Shown here piece after piece: positions 12,666 to 60,564 of a stretch of 64,000 nucleotides of DNA (positions within the stretch are counted from its first letter, which is position 1; every line of letters starts with the position of its first letter). This stretch comes from Selaginella moellendorffii (taxonomy: Eukaryota; Plantae; Lycopodiophyta). The notes below the pieces were generated by a model that worked only from the letters and a program-made list of their open reading frames with translations, searched no databases and was not told where the DNA came from. A program made the position numbers and the translations under genes. Location of the stretch: positions 422,833 through 486,832 of the forward strand of contig NW_003314281.1 of the NCBI RefSeq assembly GCF_000143415.4, in the 5' to 3' direction.

Positions 12666-12745
12666 TGACGGCTGTGGGATTTGAACCCACGCCCTTACGG
12701 ATTGGAGCCTAAATCCAACGCCTTAGACCACTCGGCCAAACCGTC
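12666..12745 (-). tRNA. tRNA-Leu (anticodon UAG)
   Basis: Minus strand reads GACGGTTTGGCCGAGTGGTCTAAGGCGTTGGATTTAGGCTCCAATCCGTAAGGGCGTGGGTTCAAATCCCACAGCCGTCA, with acceptor stem, A box, anticodon arm TTGGA-TT TAG GC-TCCAA, long variable arm and GGTTCAAATCC B box. Confidence 0.95.
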
Positions 12746-12804
12746 ATTATATGATCATCGAAATGTTAAAAAGAAAAACGTATGCTCTGGATTAGGTCAA
12801 AATA

Positions 12805-22846: not shown

Positions 22847-24670
22847 ATGCGTGAGCTTTCCACGGGCAGTGTGAAGGAGGATCTAGCGTCGTTGGTGGCA
22901 TCGTGCAAGGATTTGTCGCAGGCCAGGCAGCTCCACGCTCGAGTTCTTTCCAGCGAGCAGCTCTCGCAGGATAGGCATCTCTGCAATCTCTTGGTGAAAA
23001 TGTATGGCAGATGCGGGAGCGCCCGTGATGCGTTTGATGTCTTTCAAAGCTTGCACTCGAGAGATGTTTTCTCTTGGAACATCATGCTGAATGCTTATAC
23101 CCAGAATGGGCATCTTGAGACCGCAAAAACGTTTCTAGAGAGCTTTCCAGAAAAGAACGTAGTTTCATGGAACACCATCTTGGCTGCTTACTCAAACCAT
23201 GACTGTGTTAACGAAGCTACCCAGTTTTTCAATAAGATGCCTGCATGGGACACAGCTTCATGGAATACTTTGATCACTGCATATGCCAGAGGAGGGCATA
23301 TGGATGCGGCAAAACTTCTCTTTGACAAGATGCCGGAGTGGAACGAGATCACCAGCATTGCCTTGATCACTGGATTCGCCAGCTCCGGAAGCCTGCATTC
23401 CGCAAAATATGTCTTTGATTTCATTCCAGAGTTTGCTCCCGCGGCAGCAATGGCTCTGATCGCGGCATACGTGCGTACAGGCCACCTCCACGAAGCCAAG
23501 CACATCTTTGACAAGCTGGAGCAGCCGAGCATCGCAGCATCCACTAGCATGATCACTGCTTACGCGCAAGAGGGCGATCTGGAAAGAGCCAAGCAAATCT
23601 TTGACGGGATGGAACTCTTGGACGAGGTTTCATGGACTGTGATGCTCCAGGCGTACGCACAGCGAGGAAAGATGAGAGAAGCCAAGCGCTTGTTTGATTC
23701 TATCCCAGTTCCGGTGGACAAGGGCCGCGATCTCGTGGCGTGGAGCGTGATGCTGCTGGGCTACACACAAGCAAGAGATGTTCCTCGGGCGAGAGACTTG
23801 TTTGAGACAATCCCACGGAGAAATGTCGTGTCCTGGACGCTCATGCTCCAGGCTTACATCGAAGCCGGGGAGTTTTCCAACGCCATCGAGCTCTTCAATT
23901 CCATGCCCGAAAGAAACGTCGTGTCGATGACCGCCATGCTTGCTGCTCACGCCGGGCGACAAGACTTGGAATGCGCAAAGTTTATGTTTGATTCCATGCC
24001 CGAGAAGAACTTGGTCTCGTGGTCGGCGATGCTGCAAGGCTACGCTACCAGCGGTGACGTCCGAGGAGCAAAGATCTTGTTCGAAGAGATGCCGTGGAAA
24101 GACACAGTTGCCTGGACAACCATGCTCCAAGCGTACGCTCAAGCTGGTCACTTAAGAACTTCCTTGTTCGTGTTTGAGACGATGCCCGAGCGAAACGTTG
24201 TGTCGTGGACAGCAATGATCTCGGCTTTTGCTCACTCTGGCAACCAGATGGATTCGATCCAAATTTTCCACACGATGAACTTGGAAGGAGTGAAGCCCGA
24301 TGATATATGCTTCGCCAGCGCTCTACTTGCTTGTAACCATGTTGGATTGCTCTACAGAGGCCATGGTTATTTTACCTCGATGAGAAGGGATCACGGGATT
24401 GCTCCAGGGAGAGAGCACTACTTTAGCATGGCCGATATTCTTTGTCGAGCAGGACGGCTCGAGAGTGCGCAGGAACTTATACGTACCATGCCTTTCGTGC
24501 CGGAAGTCTTGCACTGGGGATCGCTGCTAAACGCGTGTAAACTTCAGGAAAATACGAAGATTGGGAACAAAACTGCCAAGCATCTGTCGACTCTGGATCC
24601 CAACGACGCTGCTCCTCACGTTCTCTTGTCAAATCTCTATGCTTCTCTTGGGAACTTGGGTAGAGCTTAG
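22847..24670 (+). CDS. Pentatricopeptide repeat protein, PLS class with E extension and no DYW domain
   Basis: Intronless 607-aa array of about 31-aa motifs (VSWTxMLQAYAQxG..AK.LFDxMPE.N), then EHYFSMADILCRAGRL..ELIRTMPFVPEVLHWGSLLNAC..PHVLLSNLYA. Confidence 0.93.
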   Translation: MRELSTGSVKEDLASLVASCKDLSQARQLHARVLSSEQLSQDRHLCNLLVKMYGRCGSARDAFDVFQSLHSRDVFSWNIMLNAYTQNGHLETAKTFLESFPEKNVVSWNTILAAYSNHDCVNEATQFFNKMPAWDTASWNTLITAYARGGHMDAAKLLFDKMPEWNEITSIALITGFASSGSLHSAKYVFDFIPEFAPAAAMALIAAYVRTGHLHEAKHIFDKLEQPSIAASTSMITAYAQEGDLERAKQIFDGMELLDEVSWTVMLQAYAQRGKMREAKRLFDSIPVPVDKGRDLVAWSVMLLGYTQARDVPRARDLFETIPRRNVVSWTLMLQAYIEAGEFSNAIELFNSMPERNVVSMTAMLAAHAGRQDLECAKFMFDSMPEKNLVSWSAMLQGYATSGDVRGAKILFEEMPWKDTVAWTTMLQAYAQAGHLRTSLFVFETMPERNVVSWTAMISAFAHSGNQMDSIQIFHTMNLEGVKPDDICFASALLACNHVGLLYRGHGYFTSMRRDHGIAPGREHYFSMADILCRAGRLESAQELIRTMPFVPEVLHWGSLLNACKLQENTKIGNKTAKHLSTLDPNDAAPHVLLSNLYASLGNLGRA

Positions 24671-41900: not shown

Positions 41901-44900
41901 TCATCCCCCCCTCTCAGGATAATGGAAGACCATCAGGGTTCTCTTGTAGACGGGCCTAGATCTGGAGGAACATCAAGAGGAGGCATCGGCGGATCTGTAG
42001 ATGGTATTAACTGCTCCTGATCCCTTTGTATGAAGTGTTTCAACCGCTGCACATGCACAATCTCTGGAGGATCGGCCTGCTGGACGTCATGCCGAACCTC
42101 ATAAACTTGTGGTCCAACTGGCCGCAACACCCGATACAGTCCTTTCCACTGTGCAAGGAGCCCCTTAGATAAACCACATACCGTAAAATGGGGAAAACGG
42201 ACTAACACCAAATCATCCACTTTATACTCCGCAGGTGGACGATGATGGGAGTTGTAGTGCTGTTGTTGTCCCACTTGTATGCGGCCTAAGTGTTCGGCAG
42301 ACTCCACTCGGACAAGTGGAAGAATGCTTGTCAAATATTGATCCCATGACCTAGTATCCGCAGCTCGTGGCAATCGCGAAGGTAAATCCAGCTCTGTTGG
42401 TAATATTGGATCATGACCATATAGAAGTTTATATGGTGAAGCACCAACAGAACTCTGCACCCTAGTGACATATGCATACTGAAGAGACGGCAAATAACCA
42501 TCCCAATCTGAATGCTGAAAGTTCACATACTTCGCAATCATCCCCTTGAACGTCCGAACGAGCCGTTCCACCAGATCGTCTGATTGTGGATGATAAGCAC
42601 TCGTGAAAGTGTGGCGAATCCCCAACCGAGACTTCAAAACATGAAATGCCTCAGCCATAAAAGCAGGACCATTATCCGAAAGAATCCGCTCTAGACAAGA
42701 ATGCTGGAACACCACTCGATTGAGGACGAAGTATCCAACAGCAGTTGCAGAAGCACTAGCAAGAGCACCAACTTCCACCCAACGAGTCAAATAGTCATAA
42801 GCAATAATAACATACTCATTGCTAGCAGTTGACTATGGAAAAGGTCCCATAAGATCAAACGCCACCAATTCAAATGGACGGGAAACTGCAATTGACTCCA
42901 ACCGTCCTTCTGCAGTCTGAGGGGGAGTATTACGAGCTTGGCACCAAACGCAGCTACGCATATACCGGATAATATCACATCGCATCTCCGGCCAATAGAA
43001 AGACCTGTGTAGCTTCTCGATTACACGACGATGTCCCATATGCCCACCTAGAACAGGAGAATCATGGTAGGCATGGAGAAACCGCGGAATAAAGATAAAA
43101 GGCACCACCAGCCGTAAATGATCATCAGGATCTGTCCCCACAAAATAAAGAAGGCCACCTTCAAGACGATATTGAGAATGTAAATGCCGAAAAGGCAAGT
43201 CATCAGCAAGTGATGCAGGATTCTCAAACCCATCTCGAAGCCTTCGAATCCATGGCTCAATCTTTTGAGCCTTGCGAACCTCATCAAGTGAAGGTTATAG
43301 CGCATGTGATCATGGGATGAGATTTGGATATACTATTACCGTGGATCCTTGGAACCTTGGGAGATAAATGGGGATAAAATAGCCACTAAGGGCTCTCTCA
43401 TAAAGCAATTGCCCCTTTTCCAGTTGGCTTAAGGGGAGAGAGATAAAGTGCGCTACAAAGGTAGATCTTGCTCTGCACCTTGTGGACACTGAACGTTAAG
43501 TATAGCAACCGCCAACGGCACAGAATCCTCGTCTAGAAAATCCACAGATGCTGGAACGACAGGCTCGTCAGAAACATGAGAAGAGAATGAAGAAGGAAGA
43601 GGAGCTCGAGAAAGGGCATTAACATCAGCTATAGAACTCCCTGGGTGGTGAACAACATCAAAATCATATATCTGAAGCTTCAAAGCCCACCGAGCAGTAC
43701 GACCAACCAAGTTCTTTCGCTTTAATAACGAAGTAACAGCAGCATGGTCACCTTCAAGTAACGTCCGAGAACCATGTAGATATGCATGAAGTTTCTCGAA
43801 ACCCCAAACTGCTGCTAAACACTCCTTCTCTGTCGTGGAGTAGTTCATCTCTGCTGGTTGTAATGTACGGCTTATATATGCAATGGGATGGCACTGACCA
43901 GGCACACTCGAGCTCTCTTGCATTAACACACCTCCAAGACCAATGTCAAAAGCATCCACGCGCAAAATAAAAAGTCGAGTGTAGTCAGGATATGCCAAAA
44001 CCGAAGGAGTTGTTAATAACTTTTTGAGATCCCCAAACGCCCGCTCACAATCCGGAGACCAGATGAAAGATGATGTTGATGACTTCAGCAACGCTCGCAA
44101 TGGTGCAGTGTGATCAGAAAGATGATCCACAAAACGCCTGAGATACTGCACCTTGCCCAAGAAGCGCTGCACATCATTCACACACTTCGGAGTAGGGAAC
44201 TTTAGAACAGCCACAAGTTTGTCAGGATCAACTTGCAAACCCTCATGAGAAATACGGTACCCAAGATAAGTTGTGTCTTTGGATCCAAACACGCACTTCG
44301 ACCGCTTCAGCTTTAAACCAACGTCGCATAGCCGATCCAACACTTTACAAACATCATGAACGTGCTCCTCCCACGTCCCCTCCGAGTGGATCAAGACATC
44401 ATCAATGAAGTCAGCAGTCACCTCCGGCATATCGCAAAGAACCTCGTCCATCATTCATTGAAAAGTTGCTGGAGCATTGTTCAAACCAAATGGCATCACC
44501 AAGAACTCATACAAACCAAATGGTGTACGAAAAGCAATCTTAGGAATATCTTCTTCGGCCATCGGTACTTGCCAGTACCCAGAAGCAAGATCTAGCTTGG
44601 TGAACCAACGACTTCGCCCCAGAAGATCCAAGAGATCAGCAGTGTGAGGAAGAAGGTACACATCCGGGATCATTACGTCGTTTAACGGACGATAGTCGAT
44701 GTAGAAACGAATACTCCCATCAGGCTTCGTCACAAGATGAGGTTCACATGCCCAAGGACTTCGCGACTTCCGAATAACACCCTTCTCCAACATCTCCTAG
44801 ACATTTGCACGTAAAATCTTGATCTCCTTTGGTGACCAACGACGAACAGGAACCTTGATTGGACGAGCATCCCCAGTTGGAATCGGATGACGTGTAGCAA

Positions 44901-45526
44901 TCTTGGCTCTAGATGATAGGTCAAAGTCAAAGAGATCAAAATACTCCTTCATGAGCTGGTCAACTGCTGCAACACAAAGATTGTCGGAGGGATCGGAAAA
45001 GGGAAGAGTAGAACAAGATGGAAACACAGGAGGAAATAGTAGGGGAACAAAAGTAATGGAAGCAGAGGTAGAAGTAGAGGGATGAAGAGGTACAGATGTG
45101 AGAGGAATGGAGGAAACATAAGGAAGTATGAGACAAGGGGGAGAAGCCTCAAAGTCACACTTGGCATGAGTGCGCTGTAACCAATCCATACCAAGAATGA
45201 GGTCAAAAGCTTGACTCGGCACCACCTACAACGACTGCAACTCAAGCTCGAAATCGCCCACACGCACAACCAGGTCTGCCTCATCCCGTGCACATGCATG
45301 TGTACGGCCGTTGCCATAAAGAATGAAAACTGGTTCCGCCGCATGACGCAAGTGTAGACGACAACGTGTGGCAACAGGTCGAGCAATAGAAGATAAACTC
45401 GAACCTGTATCAACCAACACGGAGAGAATAATAGGAGACCTATTGTTATAAAGATGAGCTTGAAAAGTAAACACTGGATGAACTGGTGCCGAGTGAACCC
45501 CTTGATGATACTCCCAAAAGAAATAT

Positions 45527-45588
45527 GGAGGGGTCATTGACTTATTCGCGCAAGGTCCCTCCATTACTCACGCGACTCCTCGTTTCCC
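45527..45588 (-). other. Putative -1 programmed ribosomal frameshift signal (G_GGA_AAC, 6-nt spacer, H-type pseudoknot)
   Basis: The gag frame reads CCG GGA AAC GAG GAG. Stem 1 is TCGCGTGAG/CTTGCGCGA and loop GGAGGG pairs with downstream CCCTCC. The protease ORF is in the -1 frame. Confidence 0.75.
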
Positions 45589-46496
45589 GGATTCATCTCG
45601 ATGTCCAAACCTTCCACTGCAGCAGCACCAACGGGACGTTGTTGACGCCAAGGTCTCCACCCAGGAAATGGAGGTCGCCAATCCGGAAAGCGCCGACAAT
45701 GTCGATAAGTATGACCAACTTCATCACACGCCCAGCAATGAACATCACGGCCACGACCACGTCCTCGTCCTTGTCCTTGGACTCGAGTAGCAGCAGCATC
45801 AACCTCCATGGGAACAGGACCATCACTCATAGAAAGTGGAGTGGATGGACGTGCAGTGAGAAGTGGAAGAGGCGACGTCTCATAACGTTGTGCCAAGCGA
45901 AGAGCATCGTCAAGGGTGGCAGGAGCAAGTGCATGCACAAGGCCGACAAGATCTTGACGAAGTGCTGGCCACAACATTCCTAGCTTGATCCGCTCCGACA
46001 TATTGGGCTCCGCACGAAGCAAAAGACTTCGGAAACGAACGCCAAATTGCATCACCGACTCAGATGGCCCTTGGCGAAGACGATGCAATTGTTGGAAGGC
46101 ATCGTCACAATCGTCGGCATGTCCGAAGGCGCGTTTGAAGACGTCCGGAAGAACACTCCAATCCTCACGAGTGGCCGCACTCAATCCATTGTACCATTGT
46201 AACGCCGTCCCTTGGAGACACGTGGGAAACTCACGTAAACAACAATCATCATCCCAAGAATGATATGTGGCAATCACCGTGAAGTGATCGAACCAATGGT
46301 ACACATCATCCCCGGGATTCCCATGAAAGAACTCCGGCCGAACGCGAGGATTGGCACCAAGAGCAGGAGGAGTTGGACCACGTGCCGTGAATGCTGCCAT
46401 CAATTGAGTTTGGTTGTTCAATTGCAAGCGCATAGCATCAAGCAATTGGACCAACTGCTGCTCGAGAGTCAAAGGAGGAGATTGTTGATCTGCCAT
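45564..46496 (-). CDS. gag: Retrotransposon Gag (open 310-aa ORF) with CCHC zinc knuckle
   Basis: PEFFHG..DVYHWFDHF, LQGTALQWY, LRQGPSESVMQF, PVPMEVD, CX2CX4HX4C. Confidence 0.9.
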   Translation of the reverse strand: MADQQSPPLTLEQQLVQLLDAMRLQLNNQTQLMAAFTARGPTPPALGANPRVRPEFFHGNPGDDVYHWFDHFTVIATYHSWDDDCCLREFPTCLQGTALQWYNGLSAATREDWSVLPDVFKRAFGHADDCDDAFQQLHRLRQGPSESVMQFGVRFRSLLLRAEPNMSERIKLGMLWPALRQDLVGLVHALAPATLDDALRLAQRYETSPLPLLTARPSTPLSMSDGPVPMEVDAAATRVQGQGRGRGRGRDVHCWACDEVGHTYRHCRRFPDWRPPFPGWRPWRQQRPVGAAAVEGLDIEMNPGNEESRE

Positions 46497-47383: not shown

Positions 47384-50300
47384 ATGCATTGTTTGCGAAG
47401 GCTATCGATCTCTTGTCCTTGCCACGGTCGTCCCATCGGAGCTCCATTTCTTAGGCCGTCACTGCTAGGGCTGTGCACAATGTCTAGATCGAGCCACAGG
47501 GGGAGAGCGCAAGGACGAGGCGGCCGCGGGGGGAGAGGCGGCGGCGGCGGCGGACGAGGAGGAGGAGAGCAGCGATGGTGGGATCCTGCCTGGAGGGCTG
47601 AGAGGCTGAGGCAAATGCGCGAAGAGGTCGGATAATCTGTGGCCTGCGGTGTGTGATTTTCTTTTTTTTTTTATCTTAGAAGGGATTCTTTGTTTGTTGG
47701 CAATTGTAGAGGGGTCCCGATGTGGAATTGGACGAGGATGAATGGTGGACGAAGCTGGAAGAGCACAAGTTCTCGGACGAGGAAGAGATTGTGATAAAAA
47801 CGAACTATGGACGTGCCGGCGCTGATAAGCTCGAGGCAATGGCTCGTGAATCTGGATTTTATTTGTGAGTTTTTTTTTTTTTGTTTTGTTTCCTTTAGTT
47901 CTTTGTCGCTGATTCATACTCCTTGGCTGCAGTCATGCATATAACCGAGGCCGGAACACGGTGCTGGTTATCAGCAAAGCTCCTCTGCCCAACTATCGAG
48001 CTGATCTTGACGAGAAGCATGGACAGTCGCAGCGTAAGGTATGTTCGTAAGCGCTTCCTTGATGGTTTTGAGTGGTCTTTTTTTCCAGATCAGTATCTCA
48101 GCTGACACAGAGACGCATGTTGAGTCCATGCTAGCGAAATCAATTGGAAAAATCTCGGTGGTGAAAGACTGCGCTGGAACATCTTCACACGGTGACGACA
48201 GTACTTTGGATGAACGTCGGAAAGGTGTTGTGAACGTCAACAACACCGAGCTCAGTGCAAGGCTAAAAGCGCGTCAAAAAGAACTACAGGCTAGGCTGTT
48301 CGAGTTTTGTTCTTGAATTGGGTTCTCATCTTGTGAAATTTTCGTCTTTACAGGCCGGTCCGGCAGCAAAGTCAATGACATCTTTCAGAAAGAAGCTTCC
48401 TGCTTTTAAAATGAAAGATGAGATCCTGCAAGCGGTTTCTCAAAATCAGGTAAATTTTAATATTTATGATGCATGGAAGAGTGGAGTGAAACTCTTTGCG
48501 GAAAGGTGCTAGTAGTCTCCGGAGAAACAGGATGCGGGAAAACCACGCAGTTGCCACAGTTTATTCTCGAAGAAGAGATAAATGCAGGGCGAGGCGCGGC
48601 TTGTGACATAATTTGTACACAACCTCGAAGAATTTCCGCCATATCAGTTGCTACTCGCGTTGCTGATGAAAGGGGAGACGAGCTTGGTGAAAGTGTTGGC
48701 TATCAAATCCGACTGGAGGCCAGGCGTTCGCAAGAGACGAGGCTACTCTTTTGCACGACTGGTGTGCTTTTGAGACGTCTGGTATACTGTATTCCATGAT
48801 TACGCTTTAGCGATTTTTACAAACTGTTTTGCAGGTTCAAGATCCGCTGCTAGAGGGCGTCAGTCATGTGATAGTCGATGAAATACACGAGCGTGGAATG
48901 AACGAAGACTTCCTGCTGGTTGTTCTACGAGACCTTCTACCGAAGAGGCCTAAGCTACGTCTCATTCTCATGAGCGCAACTATCAATGCCGATATGTTCT
49001 CCAAATATTTTGGCAATGCACCGAAGCTGCACATTCCGGTTAGCACTTTCTTTTTCCTGCGTGTGTAGCTGAACGTGTTCGAATTGCCAGGGTTTTACCT
49101 TTCCCGTTCGAGAATTTTTCCTGGAAGATGTTGTGGAAAGTACTGGATTCCAATCACAAAATAACCAAGCAAGTTCTCGGTTTTCTGGAGGAAGACGAAT
49201 TGAGAAACAAAAGGATTCTCTGACTGAACTTTTTGAGGTACTCCAACTTATTGCCCCGACTGAATTTTCTCAACTGTATCGACAGGAAGTGGTCATCCAA
49301 GATACATACAAGCAATTTTCCAAGTCAACAAGGAAGTATTTGGAGTGCTGGAATCCAGAAATCATAGACCTTGACCTGGTATGGATTTTCCAGTATTCTT
49401 TCCCCTGAAATTTCTTAAATCCGATTGTGAAGGTGGAGGCAGCAATTCAACACATATGCGAAGAGAAGGACGATGGTGCTATTCTGGTATTCTTAACAGG
49501 TTGGGATGACATTTCCAAGCTTTTGGACAAGCTGAAACTCAATCCATCCGTAAGAAATGAACTGCTGCTTCCTCTGCATGGATCCATGCCTACAATTAAT
49601 CAAAGGCAAATATTTCAACGCCCTCCACCTGGTGTAAGGTAATGCTTCCGGCTGATCGTTTTGATTTCTAACTTTCTGCTTTCAATGCAGAAAAATTGTC
49701 TTAGCGACGAATATTGCAGAAACTAGCATAACTATTGATGACGTTGTGTATGTTATCGACTGTGGGAAAGCTAAGGAAACTAGCTATGATGCTCTTAACA
49801 AGCTGGCGTGCCTTCTTCCATCCTGGATATCCAGGGCTGCTGCTCATCAGGTCTGAATTTACGTCCTTGGTTCTTAGCTGAAGGATTTCTAGCACATTTT
49901 CTTGCTTTTATTTGCCAGAGAAGAGGACGAGCCGGAAGGGTGCAACCTGGAATTTGTTTTCATCTCTACCCGAAGCTGATGTACGATGCTATGGCACAGT
50001 ATCAGCTTCCAGAAATCCTGCGAACACCCCTGGAATCTCTTTGTCTGCAGATAAAGAGCCTACAGGTCGGAAGTATAGCGAAGTTCTTATCTAAAGCTCT
50101 GGAGCCTCCAGAGCTCCGTGCTGTGGATAATGCTATTGAGTCTTTAAAGACGATCGGTGCCTTGGACGATCGTGAGGAGCTGACGTCTCTTGGTACGATT
50201 CAAGCCGCGGTTTCTAAGACATATGAGCTAACTCTGGTTGCAGGTCGACACCTTACAACATTGCCGTTAGATCCAAAGGTTGGCAAAATGCTGCTGATGG

Positions 50301-51299
50301 GAGCCATATTTCAGTGTCTAGATCCAGCGCTAACGATTGCGGCAGCCTTGGCTCACCGGGATCCTTTTGTTATTCCGATCGATAAGAGAGATGCTGCTGA
50401 CGAAGCGAAACGAAGGCTCGCAGGAAACGCGAGAAGGTACTTTTCTATTCAGTCAAGCCTTGATTTTCATGGGGTTCTTTTTATGATGTTGATAAGCAGT
50501 GACCACTTAGCTCTAATGAGGGCATATGAAGGTTATATAGTTGCCAAGCGACATGGACGCGAACGCAATTATTGCTGGGAGAATTTTTTATCTGCACAGA
50601 CTCTACAATGGATGGACGGTGCGAGAGAACAGTTTTACGACCATCTTTCTAAGATTGGCTTCGTCGATAACTCATCAAACTCAGCAAACTATGCGGTAGA
50701 GTTTACTTTGCAATGTCTGTCTCCAACTTACGATGCATTTCTCGTCCAGGCTTACAACAAGCACAGTGACGATCTGGAAATGGTTCGTGCGGTTTTGTGC
50801 GCTGGTTTATACCCGAACGTCGTGCAATGCAAGGCAAGGGGAAGACGAACAGCGTTTTTCACAAAGGACGATGGCAAAGTCGAGCCTCATCCGGCCTCTG
50901 TCAACAGTCGAGTCGGCCAGTTTGCACAGCCATGGCTCGTCTACAGTGAGAAGGTGAAGACAACCGGGATCTACCTTCGGGACACCACCAACATTTCCGA
51001 CTATGCTCTTCTCATGTTTGGAGGGCCGCTCGTCTCAAACGGCAAAGGTGTGGAGATGCTCGATGGCTATCTACAATTCACAGCGTCTGCCAAGACCATG
51101 GAGCTTGTAAATGTAAGTTGCTGTCCTTGCAAGAGTTTCTTTTTAACAGCTTTTGTGTGCCCAGGCATTGCGGTCGCAGCTAGATGACTTGCTCACGAGA
51201 AAAATCAAGGATCCAAGATTTGATATACATAGAGAAGGGAAACATGTGGTAAGCGCAGTTTTGGCATTGTTGCATTGCGAGGAGAAGCAATATTATTAG
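47384..51299 (+). CDS. DExH-box ATP-dependent RNA helicase, DExH1/DHX36-like; multi-exon
   Basis: RGG-rich N-terminus then [17 protein letters not shown]; [17 protein letters not shown]; CTQPRRISA; DEIHER; MSAT; LPLHGSM; [11 protein letters not shown]; [12 protein letters not shown]; HA2 and OB-fold segments. In-frame ATGs at 47384 and 47480. Confidence 0.93.
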
Positions 51300-51399: not shown

Positions 51400-52880
51400 A
51401 AAAAGTACGTCGCCACACCTCGGACATGGAGGCAGTAAAGAACTTGATGTCGTTGCAAATGAGTACACACCTTCGCAACAGTCGACAATGGCGCAGTTTT
51501 GGATGAGGCAGTGGATTTTGCCATCCAGAAGCTACGCCTTGGCGAGCCTCAGAAATGGAAGAAGAACTCTGTGTATATCAACTGTATATGGATGGGTACA
51601 TATACATTGAAACTACTGCCACGCGCACATCATCTCTACCTCTAACACCAAACACCTTCAAATCACGCGGAACCTCTGTAGTTTTCCCTTGGATCTGAGT
51701 TTAAATCCACGGAGCGCGAATTGTTGCTATTTTTACCATCAATCAGCACGTCAGCCAGGACTATACCCGCTCTTCATGACAGGAAGCGTAGCTGACGCAT
51801 GGTTCTCGACTTTCCCACCCAGAGCTCTGCAGCACCATATGTAGTGCTGCACAGCACCACGCCGCATATTGATCTGGCCTTTTAATCCAGTAAGAGCCCA
51901 TCAATAGCCTAGTACTTTTGCGAGGATCCTGGAAGGGGAATCCCATGCCACCTTTAGCGCATCTTCGACAATCTTAGACATTTCTTGGGCTTTGGAGATG
52001 CATGCTTGACCACGGCCGAAAGAGGCCTCGACATGTCCCCGCCGTTTTGAATCGCTGCGATCAGCACATATCCAGTCGCCATCGGCTTCTCTCATCCATT
52101 TCTGCGCAAGGTAATTGAGAGGTGGGATCACGTCGGAAGCGAAGTCCACACGCCACGCGAGCAGCAATCCCAGCACGTAGCGCCATTGGTCCTTCGCTAC
52201 ACCGATCTGTCTTGCAGCGTCGACAAGCTCGTTTTCTCTGATGATACGCCTTGTAAACCTGGCCAAGCATAAGCACGAGAAAAACACGCCGTCAAATAGA
52301 CTCAGGCGTCCATTCTGTCACCTTGCAGTCTACCAAAGCTTTCAGCACTCCTCATAGAACCTCTCGCCACCAACAAAACTTGGCAACGCGTCTGGCTGCA
52401 TATATATCAATCAGATCAACGAAGCTGCGACCGCCAACCTTAATAAACAGTTTGCCCACTGGATATTCTCCGTCTAGTGGAAATCTCTCCATTCTCAATC
52501 TCATCAATCTCAAGGTAGCCGTAATACCATGCCGTCTTGTCCCAGGCTTGGAGGAAAACGGGAGGACGACACTTGACACCCAGTCCAGCAGTTAAAATCA
52601 AGCTGCCAATCGCGTAGTTCTTCCAACTGCATGAAAACAGTTTTTGGTTAAGCAAACGTTAAGGATAATTTCCTTACTCTGCGAAGTCCACAGTTTTATT
52701 TCCAACTGATCAAGCTCAGATCACGAAGACACCAGAGTGCTTCTTCGTTCTGCATTTGAGTATCAATGCTTGTGGTCGTCGGAGTTGCCGTGTCTTCGAC
52801 GTCGACCACGTCGTGCTCAGATTCCCAGCAGGAAATCTTCTGCTTCAAAGCTGCAAGGTAGAGATTTACAAAAAAGAGCA
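51400..52880 (-). pseudogene. Gene-like ORF fragments of unknown family, interrupted by stops
   Basis: Short coding-looking stretches with intron-like breaks (e.g. RFTRRIIRENELVDAARQIG..., WKNYAIGSLILTAGLG...) but no recognisable motif and no continuous model. Confidence 0.25.
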
Positions 52881-52968
52881 CGAGTACTTATCGCCCCCAA
52901 AACCCTGAATAAATCTTCGAATATGCCGATGTTCGATTCCTAGAATATGCTATTTACAAAAAAAATTT

Positions 52969-55900
52969 CTACTCGATACCCTCTACAAGCATTGGGCCGC
53001 TCCTGACGCCGCCGCCTTCGTCTGGTTTCTGTTCTTCCTTCTTGGTTTGATCGCTCCTGGGCTTCGCTCCAATCTCCTCTCCTCTCGCTCGCGCGGCTCT
53101 TCTCCTCACTAGAAATCCCCGCACTAGAGCTTCAATCCTTGTGGCCGCTCCCCGCAGGTAAATGTCGTGAATTCGTTTCTCTCGTTCGATCCGAAGAGTT
53201 AGCGGCAGACCCTGTGCTCATAGAAAGAGAGACTCTTCTCAAGAAACAAAAAGAACGCTCGTGAGCTGCTTAACTGTGGGTCCAATCTTGTAGAGCGTCA
53301 GAGTTTCTAGCAGCTGCTTGAAAGGAATGCCTTTGTTTGGGACTCGAAAGCTTAGGACCTCGAACTCGATCCTCATAATCCTGGACAACAAAAAGGCTAT
53401 CATCGAGCAAACCCACCAAAACAAGCTTCATACCATTCCACAGTGGCATTATGCCGACGTCCCAAGGGGATACCCAGCGCATCCACAAATCTCCGTAGCT
53501 TGTGCATTCCAATGTATCCCGTAGCACTGCCAACCAGAGAAAAGGTTCGGGCCTAAAACTATGAAAGAGCTTTGCTTACTGGGGATCATAGTGAGCCCAT
53601 AGAGCTTTGAAGCCGAGAAGGTGTGTAGGCGTGACCATCGAATTCTCATTCACCAATCCAAACGTGATGGCGTCGAGAATAACAGCTACAAACAAGTTCA
53701 TGAAGATAAAGCTTGCGACCAGGACCAACAGCACGAAGTATATCACCCCAGCAAAGGGGAAGCCACAGTCGTTCGCCGTCAAATGGCTACTCTTGGAACA
53801 TAGGGGTGAGCCGACCATCACGTCACCCATAATGCAAGACCAGTTGTCCAGTGTTGAAACCTGTGGGAAAAAAAAACGAAGAAAACGGAGAAGTGAGGGA
53901 TGGAAGAGCCAGAAAGCAAGAAACTTACCTGAAAGACGGTAATGAAAGAATTGACGAATGTCCGAAAGTTGAGCACGGGGCCAATGCAGTTCCCGTCCTT
54001 GACGTGACTAAACATCTGGAAGCCAACACCCGCAAACGCAAACAGGAAAATAGCGAGAAGAGCCATGATCTCTCCCATTGTTGGCAAACATATGAATATG
54101 GTTCTGATAATCACCCGTGCTCTCGGTACGTGAGGAATGATGCAAAAGACCCGAGTAATGTAGCCAAAGCGACCAAGATAACCCCTCGGTGTTCCCTTCA
54201 CTCCCATCAAGCCCGACGCCGCTATAATAGATATCAGTGCCTCAATGTGCCTCGAATACTCTTTTTTGTAAACTCTAAACTGCACAAAAAAGAAAAGAAA
54301 AGAAGTTAGAATTCAGGGGAAACGCTCCCGCACATACCTCGTCGCCTAAAAACTTCGTCAGAGCCTCCAACAAGAAATATGTCGTAAGAGCGACGTGAGC
54401 TTTCTGGCGGCGTGTGGAAACATATGGCGGCTGGCCAGCATAGTTCGTGGCCAAAAGTCCAGAGTATCCCAGGAGGCAAATGATCATGATCTTCTGGTAC
54501 GTACGATTTCGGATGGCATAGAAACAGAACTTCCTGATGAAATTCTTTGGAGGTCGCGGCAATGCTGCTGGCTTCGTCTTCTGGATAATTCGATTCATGT
54601 CCCGCCACAGCTTCTGCCTCTCGGTCAGAAGCAAGGCCCCGGAGTTCTTGCCAAACTCGTTGATGAATACTCCGATAAACACCCGGACTATGAAAAATCC
54701 CCCGCATATGCAAAAGGCCACAAAGAAAATGGCATAAGCCGGACTGCTATCCCGTTGCGGCTGCTTGTCCTGACCAACAATATCCATTACGGGGTACAGC
54801 CAGTTCGTCACCCAGTTGTCGAAAGTGGAGCAAACGAATAACGAGAGGAAAGCGTTGCCAATGTCGTCAAAGTGGAACGTGGGATTTTTCCACGCCCGTG
54901 GAGAGTAGAGGCCAACGTTGTTGTAATAGTGACCAGTGCAATAGGCTCGATGAGTTATACTTGAATCGTTGCACGAATAGAGAAGGCCTCGAAACAACTG
55001 TATTCCTATGGATCCAAAAATCACGAAGATGAGGAAGGTGAATAGCAGAACAGCAACTATAGCCGGAATGGTTTTGATGAGATTCGTCAATAGGGTCCTC
55101 AGCTTTGCAGCCCGAGAGATAAACCGAAATGGTCGGAGTGCAGTCAAAGCATGTATTGCTCGTCTAGACCTCTCACTCCCACTCCAGCTCGATAGATTAA
55201 GTCCGTCGATGATAAGTAGAAAGATATCCAAGATATTGTAAGGATCGTTGAGCACCGCGTCAGGCGAAAACATTAAACCATAAGAGATTACTTTCAGCAG
55301 AAACTCCACCATAAAAAACTGTTAACTCAGAATGTTAAACCATGGACAGGAGAAACGAAGGCTTTACCGACCGCGAAGACGAGCTTGTGAAGAATCTTCA
55401 TGGCAAGGTCGGCAAAGACTGGCTCTCCAGTCGATCGCATCTCAATAACAATCCAGGTACTCAAGGCAACCCAGCCAAGAGAAAACCAGCGCCACCACTT
55501 ATGCTCGACGATTTTTCTCGAAAGTTTTCTGAGGCTGCTGTTCTCTCCAAAAATCAAAAGCGATCCTTCATGCAGGTACCATGGCCTTTCAATTCTGGTA
55601 AAATCCTTCTCAAGTAGTTCGTAGTCGGACAGCTGAAAGGACTCCCTCTTGCTATTGCTTCTGCTCAGACTTCTCATGAGCATGCTGGTAGACTTAAACG
55701 AAGGAGGCTTCGTAATGTCCGCGAGCGTGAGAACAGCATCCTCCAGTGCAGTCCTCGAGCCTCGCTTTTCCCCAATGTCTGGTGGAAATCCGGTAGCCTG
55801 TAATATCTGAGAGTTCCTACTGGCTCTTCTTTCTCCTCCTGTCGTTGAGGTGGAGGTGTTTTCCTCTGCACCTGTAGTCGACACGGCCTCTAAAGTTTGT

Positions 55901-58900
55901 CCGCCCCCTTCTGCTTCCCCAGAAACTGCTCCAGGGAGGTCGTAGCCTCTGTCTCGAGCGCGATCATCGCGGTCCCGGTCTCGGTCGTGGTCCGCGTCGC
56001 GGTCCCGGCGTTTGTCCCGTTGAGATTCCTTGTGAGTTTTCACTGGCCTGACGCTCATGCCAAGGACACGGTGCGCAAAACTTCCAAAGCTTGACTTCAT
56101 TCCCTCGACAGCGCCAACCATCCAGCTTCCGCTTCTTACGTACGCTCTGCTTTGCATGCGCTTGAGCAATCGTATGTGGTCCGTCTGTGGGAAAGAGAAA
56201 TGAATTGTCTGTCAGCGCCTCAAGCTTGAGTAGTACCCGTTGAATCTGCTTTTTCTCGTTGTCAGTAAGCTCGTTCCGCTCTAGTAAAACAGCGATAATA
56301 AGGTTCATAATGATAAAAGCTGTCAAAACAAAATAGAATATATACAGGAAAGGAGCCACTCCGCTGCGAAACCATGGGTCAACCTCTTTGTTGATAACAA
56401 AGAAGAGCTTACTTGTACTCTACTCCCGGTCTCATCGAATTCCACAGTTGATTTGGCCAGGACTCAGCAGTAGTTACCGAGAACCAGAGAAGCATAGTTT
56501 GAAGCATATTATCGTGGTTTCCACGGGGATACCCGTCCGAAAACTTGTAATACTGGCCACTGTAGAGCTCCATGCTTAATATGGAAAATACCACAATAAC
56601 GAGCATATAAAAAAAGAACACGCTGACAAGCGAGCCAACACTTTTCATACAGGTAGCCTGCAAACATAATTACCGTCCACATTCCTTTCAATGAAACACA
56701 AGGACTTACCACAACAGAGGGGTTCCTGTCGACGTGTTTTTTTGACAAGTAGAACCATCGCAAAACTCGAACAGCAGAGATGTTTGGATACTTGCGCGAG
56801 ACCAAAGCTCCAGCAGAGACCACAACAACAAAGAAATCTAGTAGGTTCATCCCTACAAGCAATGCGAAGATAAAGCTTAGAAAGGAGCAAAAATTGCTTA
56901 CTGTCGGATATAAACGAGCCTGGACCGTAAGCAAGAAACCTCAGTAAAAGCTCTCCTGAGAAAACCACGAGGAGAACAGCTTGAATACCATCTGCGCTGG
57001 AGTTAAGTCAAGCAAACGATGATGAAAAAGAAAAACGAATAGTGTGGATACAGAGCGTGTACAATAGTTCCTTGGACATGCCGTACTTGTATAAACACAG
57101 GACGATAGCGTTGACAGTCACGGCCAATAGCACGCCCCAGTCGAAACTAGGACGTTCCGCAATCGCGCGGCACTGATCGGATAGTGATAAAGCTGCTCTG
57201 GCTCCCATGGACATACTTCGACTCAATGAGCGGTTGTAAGTCATCGAGCCAGCCCTGCTTAGCCTCAATGAGCTAGACCGGAACGCTTCTCTCATGGACG
57301 ACTGGGTGCGACTAAATGCCCGAACAACATTCCGTTGCACTTTCTTTGATTTGTTCCACAGCCGCGTATGCCATCTCATACTGGCATCGTCACGTATGAT
57401 GTCGTCCCTCAGGATGTTGGCCATTATTGTTGCACTGTAAAAGGAAGTCTGGGCTTGACGGCTTTTTTTTAGCAGCGCCTGCAAAGAAATGAACCACCTT
57501 TTGATCTTCAAAAGTGAAAAAAAGAAGACTTCATGCCTGGTGTTCTGCTCGAACACGGAGAAATACTCCACTTATTCCAGCTATGAACACATTGACAAGA
57601 AAATATGCACCGATTACCACCAAGCTCATGAAGTAGGAATCTGCACGGGCGAGCTTTAGCACAAGTAGAATTTATAAAGACCTACTTGCTCGTTCCCCCT
57701 GAGAATCCTTTACATGATACATTATAAGTGCCCATCCTTCCAGCGACACAATCTAAACGGTCCGAAGGTGCATCAAAACAAAGATATGCCATAGCAGAGC
57801 TCATACCTGAAACATACTGATCAGGGAATACCAGAGATAGTCGAAGCTTGTTTGTCCATAGTTCGGATTTCCATGCAACTGCAAACGTAACGTCACGAAC
57901 ACCCAAACACTCTAAAGGTGGAATGCCTCACCGTACACTTCTGATTGGAAGGGCATATGTACGCATCGAGAACCTTCTTGTCACAGAAACGTTCTGGGTA
58001 GGCTTCTTTCTTGTCCGTTTTCCGCAAACACCTGCGCATATCGGAATTCAATAAGAGTTACTGTAACCAATCAAGTACCGGTTTAACATTGTCTTTTGCA
58101 AGAATTGCGTCCCAAGAAGCGCATAGAAAACCAGCCAGAAAAAAGTAAGCAAGATGACATTTTCAAGCGGACGAACGCTTCGTTTCACTGCCGCCATGAT
58201 AGCCTGCCAAGGATGAAACATTATCAATGAGGAAATGAAAGCAGAGGGGCAGCATACAATGACATCGGCAAAAAAAGTGATGTGCTTCAAAGCGAGCAGG
58301 CCGCGAAAGGCACGCAAGACTGCCAACCGTGCAAAAAAATCACTTCCAGTTATGCCTCTAACAATAATATGTATCCTGTAGCTCATACAGCATCAGACAT
58401 GCGCATGAAACAAGCAACATGTTGCATCGTACCAGGAATCAATGACCATAGCAAAATCGAGCCGGTTGTATGGGTTGCGAAGGTAGCAATGACGTCTCTT
58501 GTAGAGGCCTAGGACAAAAATCTTTAGAATCACTTCCAGCCTGCATCCAAAGAGATCTTTCAAGCCGAAACTTATCAATTACGGAAAAACATACGTGCTT
58601 AGTGCTGTGATTAAACCGTCCAAAAAGTCAAGCTTGAAATTCCTTATATCAGTCCAGCGTTCTGATCTGTTGCCAATTTTTACTTGGAAAATGAACACTA
58701 TGAGGTGAGCCCAGATGAGAAACAGAATAAAATACTCTGCTTTCCTGCAAGAACAATGCAAGGATAAGAAATGAAAAAGCTAATGAGAGGCTTACTGGCT
58801 ATAGAGAAACATGAAGAGCCTCAGCCGAGTAGTACTGTAGGGACTCCAAAACCCAAGAGCATGACCATCTAGTCGAGCTCCAGTCCCTATAGCACTGCGT

Positions 58901-59332
58901 CTTGCCTTTCTTCTTACCACCTAGAAAATAAAGCTAGAAAAAGGTTTAAAAAAAAAAACTGAGAGAAAGTTGAAGTACCAGCATTCGCTTGACTGCTTTG
59001 TAAGCTTTTTTCCAGTTCTTCCTGGGCAAGGAGTCAGTAGCACGAGGAAGATCTCCCAATGCAGCTAACAAGGCAGCAGTCTTCTCTTCCTCTGGCTTGA
59101 GCGCTCCTCCAATAGGAGGCAGACGATCTTCCCAGCGAGGGTTTCTAGCTATGAAATCTGGATCCTCCTCGGGATCATTGTCGCTATAGAGAGAAACTTG
59201 GATTAAATCATGCATTTTTCACGTGAAGGGGATGGTAGTTTACCGTTGAATCAGCTGAGCCACAGCTTTGGAGGCGGCATCGAACATCCCCGAGAGCCTG
59301 GAACTCCTGCGCCTTATTCCAACCCCCTCCAT
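52969..59332 (-). CDS. Four-domain (4x6TM) voltage-gated-type calcium channel alpha-1 subunit (Cav/Nav/NALCN superfamily); multi-exon
   Basis: Four pore loops: NPNYGQTSFDYLWYSLISMFQ|IVSLEGW, NHDNMLQTMLLWFSVTTAESW, FHFDDIGNAFLSLFVCSTFDNW and NFRTFVNSFITVFQ|VSTLDNW. S6 motifs include MNLIIAVLLE and MNLFVAVILD. C-terminal YDPHATGYI..L..F...L..PLG and IQ-like AATRIEALVRGFLVRRR. ATG at 59332, stop at 52969-52971. Confidence 0.92.
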
Positions 59333-60564
59333 AGTGTCGCCGAGTCACGCGATGCCCTAAAATGCTAGCTCATAACCCTAGCATTTTTGTCCAACAAAAA
59401 CCCTGATTTTCAAACAGCAGTTACAAATGGCGCGTAACCGTTATCGAAATTTAGGGTTTATCATATCCTAGGGTTTCTGAGCTGGGGCGAGGAGCGACGG
59501 CACAAGGCAGATTTCTCGGTTCTTGGTTCATCACTCCGGAATTTGAGAAGGATTCCAGCGAGATCTCGGCGAGCAAGCTCGATTTCATGGGTCCTCCCAT
59601 ACATGGCGTGAGCAAACCAGACGATTGGGCAAAAGCCGTCGTTGATTGCTACCCATGGTCAGCTCTACACGTTTTCTTTCTCTCTTCTTCTCGGGCCTTT
59701 CTCTTCTCGGGCTTTCTTAAGATTTTCCTTTCTTTTATCAGGAATTGGAGCTCTCATGCCCTTGGTTTTGGAGTCAATACAGCATAAGCTCTTCATGCTT
59801 ATCCATAGCCAGTAAGTATGCAAGTAAACTACCTTGTAATTGCTGTGCTACATTGTTTTCAAACACAGGAGAATATGTGTTGCTATTCCTCATCCTAACT
59901 AAATGGAACAACGATGGAAAGATGTAAGGCCCCAGCTGTGCACTTTAGACCATCAGTTCCATGCTGAGTTGAAGCTTGGCTGTCATCATTTCCAGCAACT
60001 TTCCTTCACAAAGACTCTTTAGAAGTAGTGATCTAGATTGAAGCAGATTGTGTTGTTTTGCTCACTACTGGACATTTTCGGTTGGAGGACCGTGATCAGC
60101 AGCCAGTGACACACGCACTTTCTGGCAAGTAAGAAAACAGTGAACACGAACAAGAACTAAAAGTTATCACGGGAGTAGCCATGAGGGGATGAATACGAAT
60201 TCGTCAGCAACAAATTCCAAGCAACACCGGGGCAAAAGAACGTCGCAGCAACAAAGATTACAACGCTGTGAGGTTTTCTGGTGAGGAGGAAGGCATCAAG
60301 GGTGAGATGTTAGTTGACTTCGCAAACCCTAAACCGCTGACAGGAATAGCTCAGCGGTGCAATAGAGTAACTTTGAGACAATCAAACACTGTGTCCCGAG
60401 CGGCAAAAATGTGAGGAGGATTCGGATGCTCCTCTCGACTGCTACTGTACAGCATAGCAGTTCATGCTCAAAAGTTAAAAATAAGAGAGAAACATACCAT
60501 GACAACTGCAAGGAAATCCTCGAACACCCAAGACCATGAAACGTGCAAAATAATCTCTCCAAGT

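What the first reader, a model, noticed from the sequence alone, without database searches (positions are those of the whole stretch)
52969..59332. Complete four-domain Cav/Nav-type channel in a land plant, with a T-type-like E-E-D-D selectivity filter
Seen: stitching exons on the minus strand gives four 6TM repeats with filter residues SL-E-GW, TA-E-SW, TF-D-NW and TL-D-NW. Known: EEDD is the animal Cav3 (T-type) signature, versus EEEE in Cav1/2, DEKA in Nav and EEKE in NALCN. Four-domain channels are absent from angiosperms but occur in flagellated green algae such as Chlamydomonas CAV2. Inference: this is a retained Ca2+-selective channel, plausibly controlling flagellar Ca2+ signalling in swimming sperm. 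Homologs in seed-free plants have been noted but are functionally little characterised.
Basis: partly seen in the sequence, partly recalled or inferred. Interest (0 to 1): 0.85.

Follow-up and report, generated by a model that had tools for sequence, protein, structure and literature searches.

The report
Spikemoss four-domain EEDD cation channel
This Selaginella gene is intact and encodes a calcium/sodium-channel-type protein that several reviews say land plants lack, but it is not a relative of animal T-type channels, and every transcript seen so far skips one exon and cannot make the full protein.

Summary
Minus strand 59332-52969 holds a 23-exon, 1720-aa open reading frame with four Ion_trans repeats. 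The filter motifs SLEGW, TAESW, TFDNW and TLDNW align column for column with Cav1, Cav2 and Cav3 filters, giving E-E-D-D.

The window is Selaginella moellendorffii. It is 97.8% identical in DNA to scaffold GL377651.1, where NCBI splits the locus into a 231-aa gene and a 1277-aa gene.

RNA data confirm 14 of my introns exactly and corrected one to GC-AG. They also show that exon 6 (58375-58258, the domain I S4 voltage sensor) is skipped in two studies. That shifts the frame and stops translation after residue 231. Even so, both haplotypes keep the full frame, and pN/pS is about 0.08.

The gene sits in a clade found only in plants with swimming sperm: lycophytes, ferns, bryophytes and Ginkgo. 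This clade is sister to unnamed metagenomic E-E-D-E channels and lies far from animal Cav3 (AU test p about 0.001). Its C-terminus resembles Cav1/2 and Nav channels, not T-type channels.

A 2016 paper already reported a moss homologue and linked channel loss to flagellum loss. This scan also found paralogues of this gene earlier on other DNA of the same genome. A role in sperm remains an inference.

The parts
52969..59332 (-). Whole coding span of the four-domain channel gene: 23 exons, 1720 aa, ATG at 59332, stop at 52969-52971.
   Evidence: Stranded RNA reads place the transcript on the minus strand.
59244..59332 (-). Exon 1 (aa 1-30), N-terminus.
   Evidence: Homologous to paralogue P0002 from the first residues.
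58979..59183 (-). Exon 2.
   Evidence: An X7 contig covers 58977-59168.
58796..58920 (-). Exon 3.
   Evidence: An X5 loose end at 58744 reads into this exon.
58595..58744 (-). Exon 4 (domain I S1-S2).
   Evidence: An X1 loose end at 58594 matches the start of exon 5.
58433..58540 (-). Exon 5 (domain I S2-S3).
58258..58375 (-). Exon 6, 118 nt, encoding the domain I S4 voltage sensor (ARLAVLRAFRGLLALKH). It is skipped in the RNA contigs seen.
   Evidence: Homology model. The joint 58433|58203 appears in X1, and an X5 loose end agrees. The exon is intact in both haplotypes with one synonymous change. It is conserved in the paralogues.
58079..58203 (-). Exon 7 (domain I S5). Without exon 6 the frame ends here after residue 231.
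57932..58031 (-). Exon 8.
   Evidence: Joints confirmed.
57807..57878 (-). Exon 9.
   Evidence: Joints confirmed.
57686..57752 (-). Exon 10, domain I pore loop. SLEGW lies at 57746-57732 and filter residue E369 at 57740-57738.
57537..57640 (-). Exon 11 (domain I S6). It is followed by the only GC-AG intron (57536-57479).
   Evidence: The RNA joint is resolved to GC..AG.
57052..57478 (-). Exon 12 (I-II linker, domain II S1). It holds Met443, where the RefSeq 1277-aa model starts.
56902..56991 (-). Exon 13.
   Evidence: Joints confirmed.
56710..56852 (-). Exon 14 (domain II S3-S4).
   Evidence: Joints confirmed.
56413..56657 (-). Exon 15, domain II S5 and pore loop. TAESW lies at 56471-56457 and filter residue E706 at 56465-56463.
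56237..56363 (-). Exon 16 (domain II S6).
   Evidence: Joints confirmed.
55372..56184 (-). Exon 17 (II-III linker, domain III S1).
   Evidence: Joints confirmed.
54338..55318 (-). Exon 18: domain III S2-S6, the III-IV linker and domain IV S1. TFDNW lies at 54826-54812 and filter residue D1203 at 54820-54818.
   Evidence: Pfam Ion_trans E 2e-36. Cav1.2 domain III aligns with E 1.5e-65, placing STFDNW against STFEGW.
53929..54279 (-). Exon 19 (domain IV S2-S5). Its S4 is charge-poor (RFGYITRVFCIIPHVPRAR, 54171-54115).
53580..53860 (-). Exon 20: domain IV pore loop, S6 and the start of the C-terminal domain. TLDNW lies at 53854-53840 and filter residue D1485 at 53848-53846.
53434..53526 (-). Exon 21 (EF-hand-like / GPHH region).
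53275..53380 (-). Exon 22.
52969..53211 (-). Exon 23 with the IQ-type motif IEALVRGFLVRRR (53136-53098) and the stop codon.
   Evidence: Pfam IQ is met by paralogue P0002 only.

Best explanation
This is one intact nuclear gene of Selaginella moellendorffii. With exon 6 included, it encodes a 1720-aa pseudo-tetrameric (4 x 6TM) cation-channel alpha subunit of the Cav/Nav/NALCN superfamily. It belongs to a separate clade restricted to plants with flagellate sperm, and Selaginella has five loci of it. Shown here: four pore loops offer Glu, Glu, Asp and Asp at the selectivity positions. Domain I S4 carries four regularly spaced basic residues, while the S4 helices of domains II-IV carry fewer. The C-terminus has a Cav1/2- and Nav-type EF-hand-like (GPHH) region and an IQ-type motif. 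Inferred: the ring of four acidic residues makes the pore Ca2+-permeable. Depolarisation is sensed mainly through domain I. Calmodulin feedback acts at the C-terminus. The likely site of action is the sperm flagellum, by analogy with flagellar Cav channels of algae and from the taxonomic distribution. The message found in available RNA skips exon 6, the domain I S4 exon, and is frame-shifted. A productive full-length transcript must therefore come from exon inclusion, which I infer to be limited to a stage or tissue not sampled, most plausibly spermatogenesis.
For: 1. Gene model and splice joints.
2. Four Ion_trans repeats: window exons, and four stretches in paralogue P0002.
3. Filter columns aligned with named Cav1, Cav2 and Cav3 proteins.
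4. Nuclear plant context: a PPR gene with an E motif, a U-box LIN-type ligase, a DEAH helicase and a Ty3 retroelement lie in the same window. The same neighbouring helicase is present on GL377651.1.
5. Both haplotypes keep the full frame, 1720 and 1716 aa. Substitutions are 1.07% in exons, 1.9% in introns and 6.6% in flanks.
6. Of 34 transcript-borne differences, 27 are synonymous, giving pN/pS of 0.08. These include sites in domain I exons.
7. Clade membership and separation from Cav3.
8. Plant hits come only from taxa with motile sperm, in line with PMC4685582.
9. C-terminal domain: Pfam GPHH at 28.3 bits against a cut-off of 26.8 on the allele. PDB matches are to Cav2, Cav1 and Nav only. 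The IQ-type motif is seen in the alignment.
Against: 1. No transcript containing exon 6 was seen. X1 and X5, from two studies, skip it. NCBI's annotation of the other haplotype carries the 231-aa product of the skipped mRNA.
2. Contigs drop rare isoforms, and the tissues of the runs are unknown to me.
3. The S4 helices of domains II-IV are poor in charges. Domain IV has two Arg at the regular spacing, where Marchantia, Sphagnum and the metagenomic sisters keep three to five. Voltage gating may therefore be weak or altered.
4. E-E-D-D alone does not fix selectivity. From my own knowledge, some invertebrate Cav3 splice forms with E-E-D-D conduct mainly Na+.
5. Pfam IQ is not met by this locus, where the motif reads IE rather than IQ.
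6. There are no expression or localisation data for sperm.
Confidence: 0.68

Rival explanations
1. The channel is a weakly voltage-dependent or voltage-insensitive cation channel that works more like NALCN or fungal Cch1 than like a fast voltage-gated Ca2+ channel. It would be gated or modulated by something other than depolarisation.
For: The S4 helices of domains II, III and IV have lost several basic residues. Domain IV S4 keeps only two Arg at the regular spacing in Selaginella. The plant clade branches outside the clade of classical Cav and Nav channels, in the poorly resolved region that also holds Cch1-like and other divergent lineages.
Against: The filter is E-E-D-D. It is not the E-E-K-E type of NALCN (recalled, not tested here) or the N-E-E-E seen in the Cch1 rows of my alignment. 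Domain I S4 keeps four charges. Bryophyte members keep fuller S4 helices. The C-terminal domain is of Cav1/2 and Nav type.
Confidence: 0.15
2. The real products are truncated. An N-terminal 231-aa fragment (domain I S1-S3), a protein of 1277-1453 aa lacking the first voltage sensor, or both are made, and the full four-domain protein is never produced from this locus.
For: All RNA evidence at the exon 5-7 junction skips exon 6. NCBI models of 231 aa and 1277 aa exist on the other haplotype. Raw reads of X16 have no depth over 57540-58739 but cover the 3' two thirds. Paralogue P0002 has a RefSeq isoform that starts at the Met right after the homologous exon.
Against: Exon 6 keeps its frame and GT-AG sites in both haplotypes, with only a synonymous change, while the flanking introns carry four substitutions. 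Its protein sequence is about 85% identical to that of paralogue P0158, against 73% overall by BLASTP. Upstream exons are under purifying selection. Full-length RefSeq isoforms that include the exon exist for paralogues.
Confidence: 0.08
3. The locus is on its way to becoming a pseudogene. It is transcribed, but only as non-productive mRNA, and it is redundant with four paralogues.
For: Transcripts are exon-skipped and frame-shifted. There are five loci in the genome. Domain IV S4 is degenerate.
Against: There is no stop or frameshift in 5.2 kb of coding sequence in either haplotype. pN/pS is 0.08. All 22 introns keep consensus ends.
Confidence: 0.06
4. It is an orthologue or close relative of animal T-type (Cav3) channels, as the E-E-D-D filter and the automatic RefSeq name suggest.
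For: The filter is E-E-D-D. RefSeq names the allele 'T-type alpha-1H'.
Against: Trees place it outside the clade holding Cav1, Cav2 and Cav3, across several branches with SH-aLRT or SH-like support of 100. The AU test rejects plants plus Cav3 (delta lnL 456, p 0.0009). The C-terminal domain matches Cav1/2 and Nav, and no Cav3 chain appears among the PDB hits. RefSeq names for the paralogues vary among L-, R- and T-type and Nav, so they carry no information.
Confidence: 0.01

Closest known systems
Animal Cav3 (T-type) channels
   Same: Four-domain architecture, an E-E-D-D selectivity filter with D-N-W in domain IV, and no recognisable beta-subunit (AID) motif in the I-II linker.
   Different: It lies in a different clade, and monophyly is rejected. 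It has a GPHH/EF-hand-like region and an IQ-type motif that Cav3 lacks. The I-II linker does not align with that of Cav3.
Animal Cav1/Cav2 (high-voltage-activated) channels
   Same: These give the best PDB matches for domain III (Cav1.2, E 1.5e-65) and for domain IV S6 plus the proximal C-terminus (Cav2.2, Cav2.1 and Cav1.x). The IQ-type motif sits at the equivalent position.
   Different: The filter is E-E-D-D, not E-E-E-E. There is no AID consensus in the I-II linker. It lies outside their clade.
Putative Nav/Cav of the moss Physcomitrella noted by Brunet & Arendt 2016 (PMC4685582)
   Same: The same idea: a four-domain channel kept in land plants that still have flagella and lost along with flagella. 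Moss members (Sphagnum, Ceratodon) fall in the same clade as this gene.
   Different: That paper gives only a reciprocal-BLAST presence call and states that no candidate exists in seed plants. Here a Ginkgo member is found, and the filter, clade position, paralogue number and splicing are described.
Unnamed metagenomic E-E-D-E channels (P0013, P0034, P0041, P0042, P0167 and relatives)
   Same: This is the sister clade, with SH-aLRT or SH-like support of 100. It shares the conserved III-IV linker (LLTERQKLWRD type) and the IQ-type C-terminus.
   Different: Domain IV has Glu instead of Asp. The genes lie on short contigs that hold the whole protein, so they appear intron-poor. The organisms are unknown, and no named member was found.
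Chlamydomonas CAV2 (flagellar Cav)
   Same: It is the functional analogy used for the sperm-flagellum hypothesis (cited in PMC11085791).
   Different: It was not compared here because no CAV2 sequence was retrieved. The one named chlorophyte channel obtained (Bryopsis, E-E-E-E) falls in the main Cav clade, not with the plant clade.

Membership tests
Four-domain voltage-gated cation channel superfamily (Cav/Nav/NALCN/Cch1) | Four tandem 6TM Ion_trans repeats in one polypeptide. | tested here: met
   Pfam Ion_trans hits fall on window exons of repeats I-IV. The allele P0159 has 3 stretches in its truncated model, and full-length paralogue P0002 has 4. The model aligns end to end with P0002.
Four-domain voltage-gated cation channel superfamily (Cav/Nav/NALCN/Cch1) | A pore loop with a selectivity residue followed by a conserved Trp in each repeat. 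| tested here: met
   SLEGW, TAESW, TFDNW and TLDNW lie in the canonical columns.
Four-domain voltage-gated cation channel superfamily (Cav/Nav/NALCN/Cch1) | S4 helices with basic residues at every third position. | tested here: inconclusive
   Domain I S4 has 4 such residues. Domains II-IV have about 2-3, and domain IV is degenerate in Selaginella. Domain I S4 lies on the exon that the observed RNA skips.
Cav3 / T-type | E-E-D-D selectivity filter. | tested here: met
Cav3 / T-type | Phylogenetic placement within the Cav3 clade. | tested here: not met
   Trees. The AU test rejects it (p 0.0009).
Cav3 / T-type | C-terminus without the EF-hand-like/IQ module. | tested here: not met
   The GPHH hit exceeds the cut-off on the allele's C-terminus. 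The C-terminus matches Cav1/2 and Nav structures only. An IQ-type motif is present.
Cav3 / T-type | Gating-brake helix-loop-helix in the I-II linker. | tested here: inconclusive
   The I-II linker shows no alignable similarity to Cav3. No structure-based test was run.
Cav1/Cav2 (HVA) | E-E-E-E filter. | tested here: not met
   Domains III and IV carry Asp.
Cav1/Cav2 (HVA) | AID motif for the beta subunit in the I-II linker. | tested here: not met
   No GY..WI-type consensus appears at the aligned position.
Cav1/Cav2 (HVA) | IQ calmodulin-binding motif in the C-terminus. | tested here: inconclusive
   The motif IEALVRGFLVRRR lies at the aligned site. Pfam IQ passes in paralogue P0002 (24.7 bits against a cut-off of 20.3) but not at this locus.
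NALCN / Cch1 | Filter with Lys (E-E-K-E type) in NALCN, or the Cch1 filter (N-E-E-E in my alignment), together with clade membership. | tested here: not met
   The filter is E-E-D-D. The Cch1 rows form a separate starred clade. No named NALCN sequence was in the set. NALCN structures scored below Cav and Nav for domain III.
Clade of four-domain channels of plants with flagellate sperm | Monophyly with Marchantia, moss, fern, lycophyte and Ginkgo sequences; E-E-D-D filter (E-D-D-D in ferns); conserved III-IV linker. | tested here: met
   The clade has support of 100, and includes Ginkgo and Adiantum. Filters are and the linker.

The most novel reading that the evidence does not exclude
Skipping of the 118-nt exon that encodes the domain I voltage sensor acts as a splicing switch. 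The gene, and perhaps its paralogues, is transcribed in ordinary tissues only as a frame-shifted, non-productive mRNA. Exon inclusion in spermatogenic cells then turns on a four-domain Ca2+ channel for the flagellum, a channel class that several reviews say land plants lack.
Probability: 0.2. Interest if true: 0.7.

Novelty: new member of a known kind. Interest (0 to 1): 0.5.

Why it matters
Reviews from 2018, 2019 and 2024 still state that land plants lack four-domain Cav/Nav channels. This locus and its relatives show that the loss applies to plants without swimming sperm, and Ginkgo extends retention into seed plants. The family gives concrete candidates for the unknown Ca2+ entry pathway that steers plant sperm, and this can be tested in Marchantia or mosses. 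It also shows that an E-E-D-D filter occurs outside the Cav3 lineage. For annotation, the RefSeq locus is split in two because the available RNA skips one exon. Joining the two models recovers the full channel.

Tried and rejected
1. My first spliced model allowed only GT donors and misplaced one intron. RNA joints showed a GC-AG intron at 57536-57479, and the model dropped from 1723 to 1720 aa.
3. The treekit AU test under the mixture model did not finish in three attempts. I replaced it with IQ-TREE LG+G4 fast searches plus an AU test, so the p-value rests on the simpler model.
4. A profile search meant to find named green-algal relatives returned only Mesostigma. That sequence has a D-D-T-T filter and does not join the plant clade.
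5. A search from the sister clade found only unnamed metagenome proteins, so the sister group's identity stays open.
6. No Chlamydomonas CAV2, charophyte, hornwort or cycad sequence was retrieved. Their absence from my lists is not evidence of absence.
7. Literature searches for gene identifiers or for a described plant Cav in antheridia found nothing.
8. Contamination was rejected because of the plant neighbours, the Selaginella-type 45-68-nt introns and the presence of two haplotypes.
Full report
**What is at the locus**

Six-frame reading of 52700-59700 shows many short minus-strand open stretches with channel-like sequence. Pfam Ion_trans matches fall on exons of four separate repeats:
- 58051-58392, E 0.002
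- 56412-56669, E 1.5e-11
- 54278-55321, E 2e-36
- 53579-53830, E 1.9e-5 (all)

The largest exon aligns with domain III of human and rabbit Cav1 structures (E 1.5e-65), ahead of Cav3, Nav and NALCN. Its STFDNW lies against STFEGW of Cav1.2.

**Gene model**

An exhaustive HMMER search with that exon returned a full-length Selaginella moellendorffii protein, P0002 (1736 aa), and other relatives. I wrote a protein-to-genome spliced aligner and used P0002 as guide. This gave 23 exons from the ATG at 59332 to the stop at 52969-52971.

Public RNA data laid on 53340-59339 confirmed 14 introns to the base. The stranded library places the RNA on the minus strand. One intron had to be moved. The joint at 57476/57535 resolves to a GC-AG intron at 57536-57479, which my GT-only aligner could not find.

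The final model has 1720 aa and 22 introns of 45-68 nt, 21 GT-AG and one GC-AG.

**Organism and annotation state**

Residues 443-1720 of the model are 98.6% identical to RefSeq protein P0159, which is named 'T-type alpha-1H' and comes from S. moellendorffii (1277 aa). The window is 97.8% identical in DNA to scaffold GL377651.1 over 6.8 kb. It is therefore the other haplotype or another assembly of the same species.

On that scaffold the locus is annotated as two genes, one of 231 aa and one of 1277 aa.

Neighbours in the window are ordinary plant genes: a PPR protein with an E motif, a U-box LIN-type ligase, a DEAH helicase and a Ty3 retroelement. This rules out contamination.

**Filter**

I aligned about 165 four-domain proteins. 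The Glu of SLEGW (E369), the Glu of TAESW (E706), the Asp of TFDNW (D1203) and the Asp of TLDNW (D1485) fall in the canonical columns. The reference patterns in the same columns are:
- Cav1-type: TMEGW/TGEDW/TFEGW/TGEAW
- Cav2-type: TMEGW/TGEDW/TGEGW/TGEAW
- Cav3-type: TLEGW/TQEDW/SKDGW/TGDNW. One Cav3 row is confirmed by name as Chanos chanos alpha-1H.

Every full-length land-plant homologue aligned at all four positions is E-E-D-D, except the fern Ceratopteris, which is E-D-D-D.

**The exon that the RNA skips**

A contig of run X1 (depth 15.8) joins 58433 directly to 58203. A loose end in run X5, from a different study, reads from 58432 into the start of exon 7. Both therefore skip exon 6 (58375-58258, 118 nt), which encodes the domain I S4 helix. 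The X1 depth in the bin that holds most of exon 6 is fully explained by exon 7 alone.

Without exon 6 the frame shifts and ends after residue 231. The longest remaining frame is 1453 aa, starting at Met268. The 231-aa gene in NCBI's annotation of the other haplotype has the same length and position as that truncated frame. Paralogue P0002 has a RefSeq isoform that starts at the Met right after the homologous exon.

Several facts argue against the gene being dead:
- The other haplotype also keeps all 23 exons in frame (1716 aa, with a 12-nt in-frame deletion).
- Substitutions are 1.07% in exons, 1.9% in introns and 6.6% in flanks.
- Exon 6 has one synonymous change, while its flanking introns carry four.
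- Of 34 differences carried by transcripts, 27 are synonymous, so pN/pS is 0.08. These include sites in domain I exons.
- Exon 6 is about 85% identical in protein to paralogue P0158, against 73% overall by BLASTP.

I conclude that exon inclusion is used somewhere that has not been sampled. Logan contigs drop rare isoforms, and I do not know the tissues of the runs.

**Other anatomy**

- Domain I S4 has four basic residues at the regular spacing. Domains II and III have fewer.
- Domain IV S4 in Selaginella keeps only two Arg at that spacing, where Marchantia, Sphagnum and the metagenomic sisters keep three to five.
- The I-II linker has no AID-type motif.
- The III-IV linker (LLTERQKLWRD type) is almost invariant across the plant clade and its sister clade.
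- After domain IV S6 comes a region that meets Pfam GPHH on the allele (28.3 bits against a cut-off of 26.8). It matches Cav2, Cav1 and Nav structures, but no Cav3 chain, at E 0.01 or better.
- Further on lies an IQ-type motif. It reads IQ in most relatives and passes Pfam IQ in P0002. At this locus it reads IE.

**Relatives and phylogeny**

S. moellendorffii has five loci:
- this gene and its allele P0159
- P0158
- P0002 and its allele P0152
- P0163
- P0161 and its allele P0001

Other members come from Diphasiastrum, Ceratopteris, Adiantum, Marchantia (Mp_2g23520), Sphagnum, Ceratodon and Ginkgo. All of these have flagellate sperm (my own knowledge). No angiosperm or conifer protein appears among the strong hits, although the databases hold very many of them. 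The word-index searches can miss relatives, so this is suggestive rather than proof.

FastTree, IQ-TREE with a PMSF mixture model, and IQ-TREE LG+G4 all give the same picture:
- The land-plant clade has support of 100.
- It is sister, again with support of 100, to a group of unnamed metagenomic E-E-D-E channels.
- The pair lies outside the well-supported clade that contains animal Cav1, Cav2, Cav3 and Nav, a Bryopsis channel and many protist channels.
- Forcing plants and Cav3 together costs 456 log-likelihood units (AU p 0.0009 under LG+G4).

The E-E-D-D filter is therefore not a sign of T-type ancestry. The identity of the sister group could not be established.

**What is known already**

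Reviews state that land plants lack these channels (PMC5824947; PMC11085791; PMC6509283). However, Brunet & Arendt 2016 (PMC4685582) reported a reciprocal-BLAST candidate in Physcomitrella and none in seed plants, and they linked loss of the channel to loss of flagella.

The Selaginella proteins are already in RefSeq under uninformative automatic names. Two earlier findings of this scan describe paralogues on other pieces of the same genome and reach the same distribution result.

New here for this locus:
- the joined full-length model
- the conserved E-E-D-D filter of the plant clade
- the formal separation from Cav3
- the Cav1/2- and Nav-type C-terminus
- the Ginkgo member
- the charge-poor domain IV S4
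- the exon-6 skipping

**Mechanism, with its status**

Shown:
- The gene is intact and under purifying selection.
- It has the four-repeat architecture.
- It has a ring of four acidic filter residues.
- It has a Cav1/2- and Nav-like C-terminal module.

Inferred:
- The pore is permeable to Ca2+.
- Depolarisation is sensed mainly by domain I.
- Calmodulin gives feedback at the C-terminus.
- The channel acts in the sperm flagellum.
- Exon 6 inclusion is restricted to a particular stage.

Main doubts:
- No full-length message has been seen.
- The voltage sensors of domains II-IV are weak.
- Filter residues alone do not set ion selectivity.

**Unexplained**

The raw stranded run X16 covers 53340-57339 at depth 2-8. 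It has nothing over 57540-58739 and then low depth over 58740-59139. This could reflect an internal start near exon 12, where the RefSeq 1277-aa frame begins, or simply 3' bias at low coverage.

Noticed in passing
window 58258-58375 and L001 4097-5240: NCBI's annotation of the other haplotype splits this locus into a 231-aa gene and a 1277-aa gene. The 231-aa product matches the frame of the exon-6-skipped mRNA in length and position.
   Followed up: yes
window 54115-54171: Domain IV S4 in Selaginella (and partly in Diphasiastrum) has Cys and Pro where other plant members and the sister clade have Arg. This is a lycophyte-specific loss of gating charges.
   Followed up: partly
window 57340-59139: Raw RNA run X16 has no reads over 57540-58739, although it covers both sides. 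This may be an internal transcription start near exon 12 or 3' bias at low depth.
   Followed up: no
window 53497-53508: Three X16 reads end at 53497 with 43 unmatched letters, and three first-mate-on-minus reads carry T>G at 53508. This may be another transcript or an alternative junction in exon 21.
   Followed up: no
window 41933-46496: Minus-strand Ty3-type retroelement ORFs (gag, RT-RNase H, integrase) lie next to a very AT-rich stretch at 36-42 kb (GC 0.27-0.32).
   Followed up: partly
window 49808-51187: A DEAH-type helicase C-terminal exon (HA2, OB_NTP_bind) lies on the plus strand, converging on the channel gene. The same neighbour is annotated on GL377651.1.
   Followed up: partly
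window 22847-24670: An intronless PPR protein ORF of 607 aa with an E motif.
   Followed up: partly
window 6132-8780: Two plus-strand ORFs with U-box and LIN-type ARM repeats, probably exons of one E3 ligase gene. An ORF at 2820-5576 has a weak 2OG-Fe(II) oxygenase match.
   Followed up: no
window 12665-12746: A tRNA-Leu gene on the minus strand (ARAGORN).
   Followed up: no
P0041, P0167, P0363 and relatives (metagenome contigs): A large group of unnamed metagenomic four-domain channels with an E-E-D-E filter is the closest relative of the land-plant clade. Some clusters hold hundreds of member sequences, and some contigs exceed 1 Mb. The organism is unknown.
   Followed up: partly
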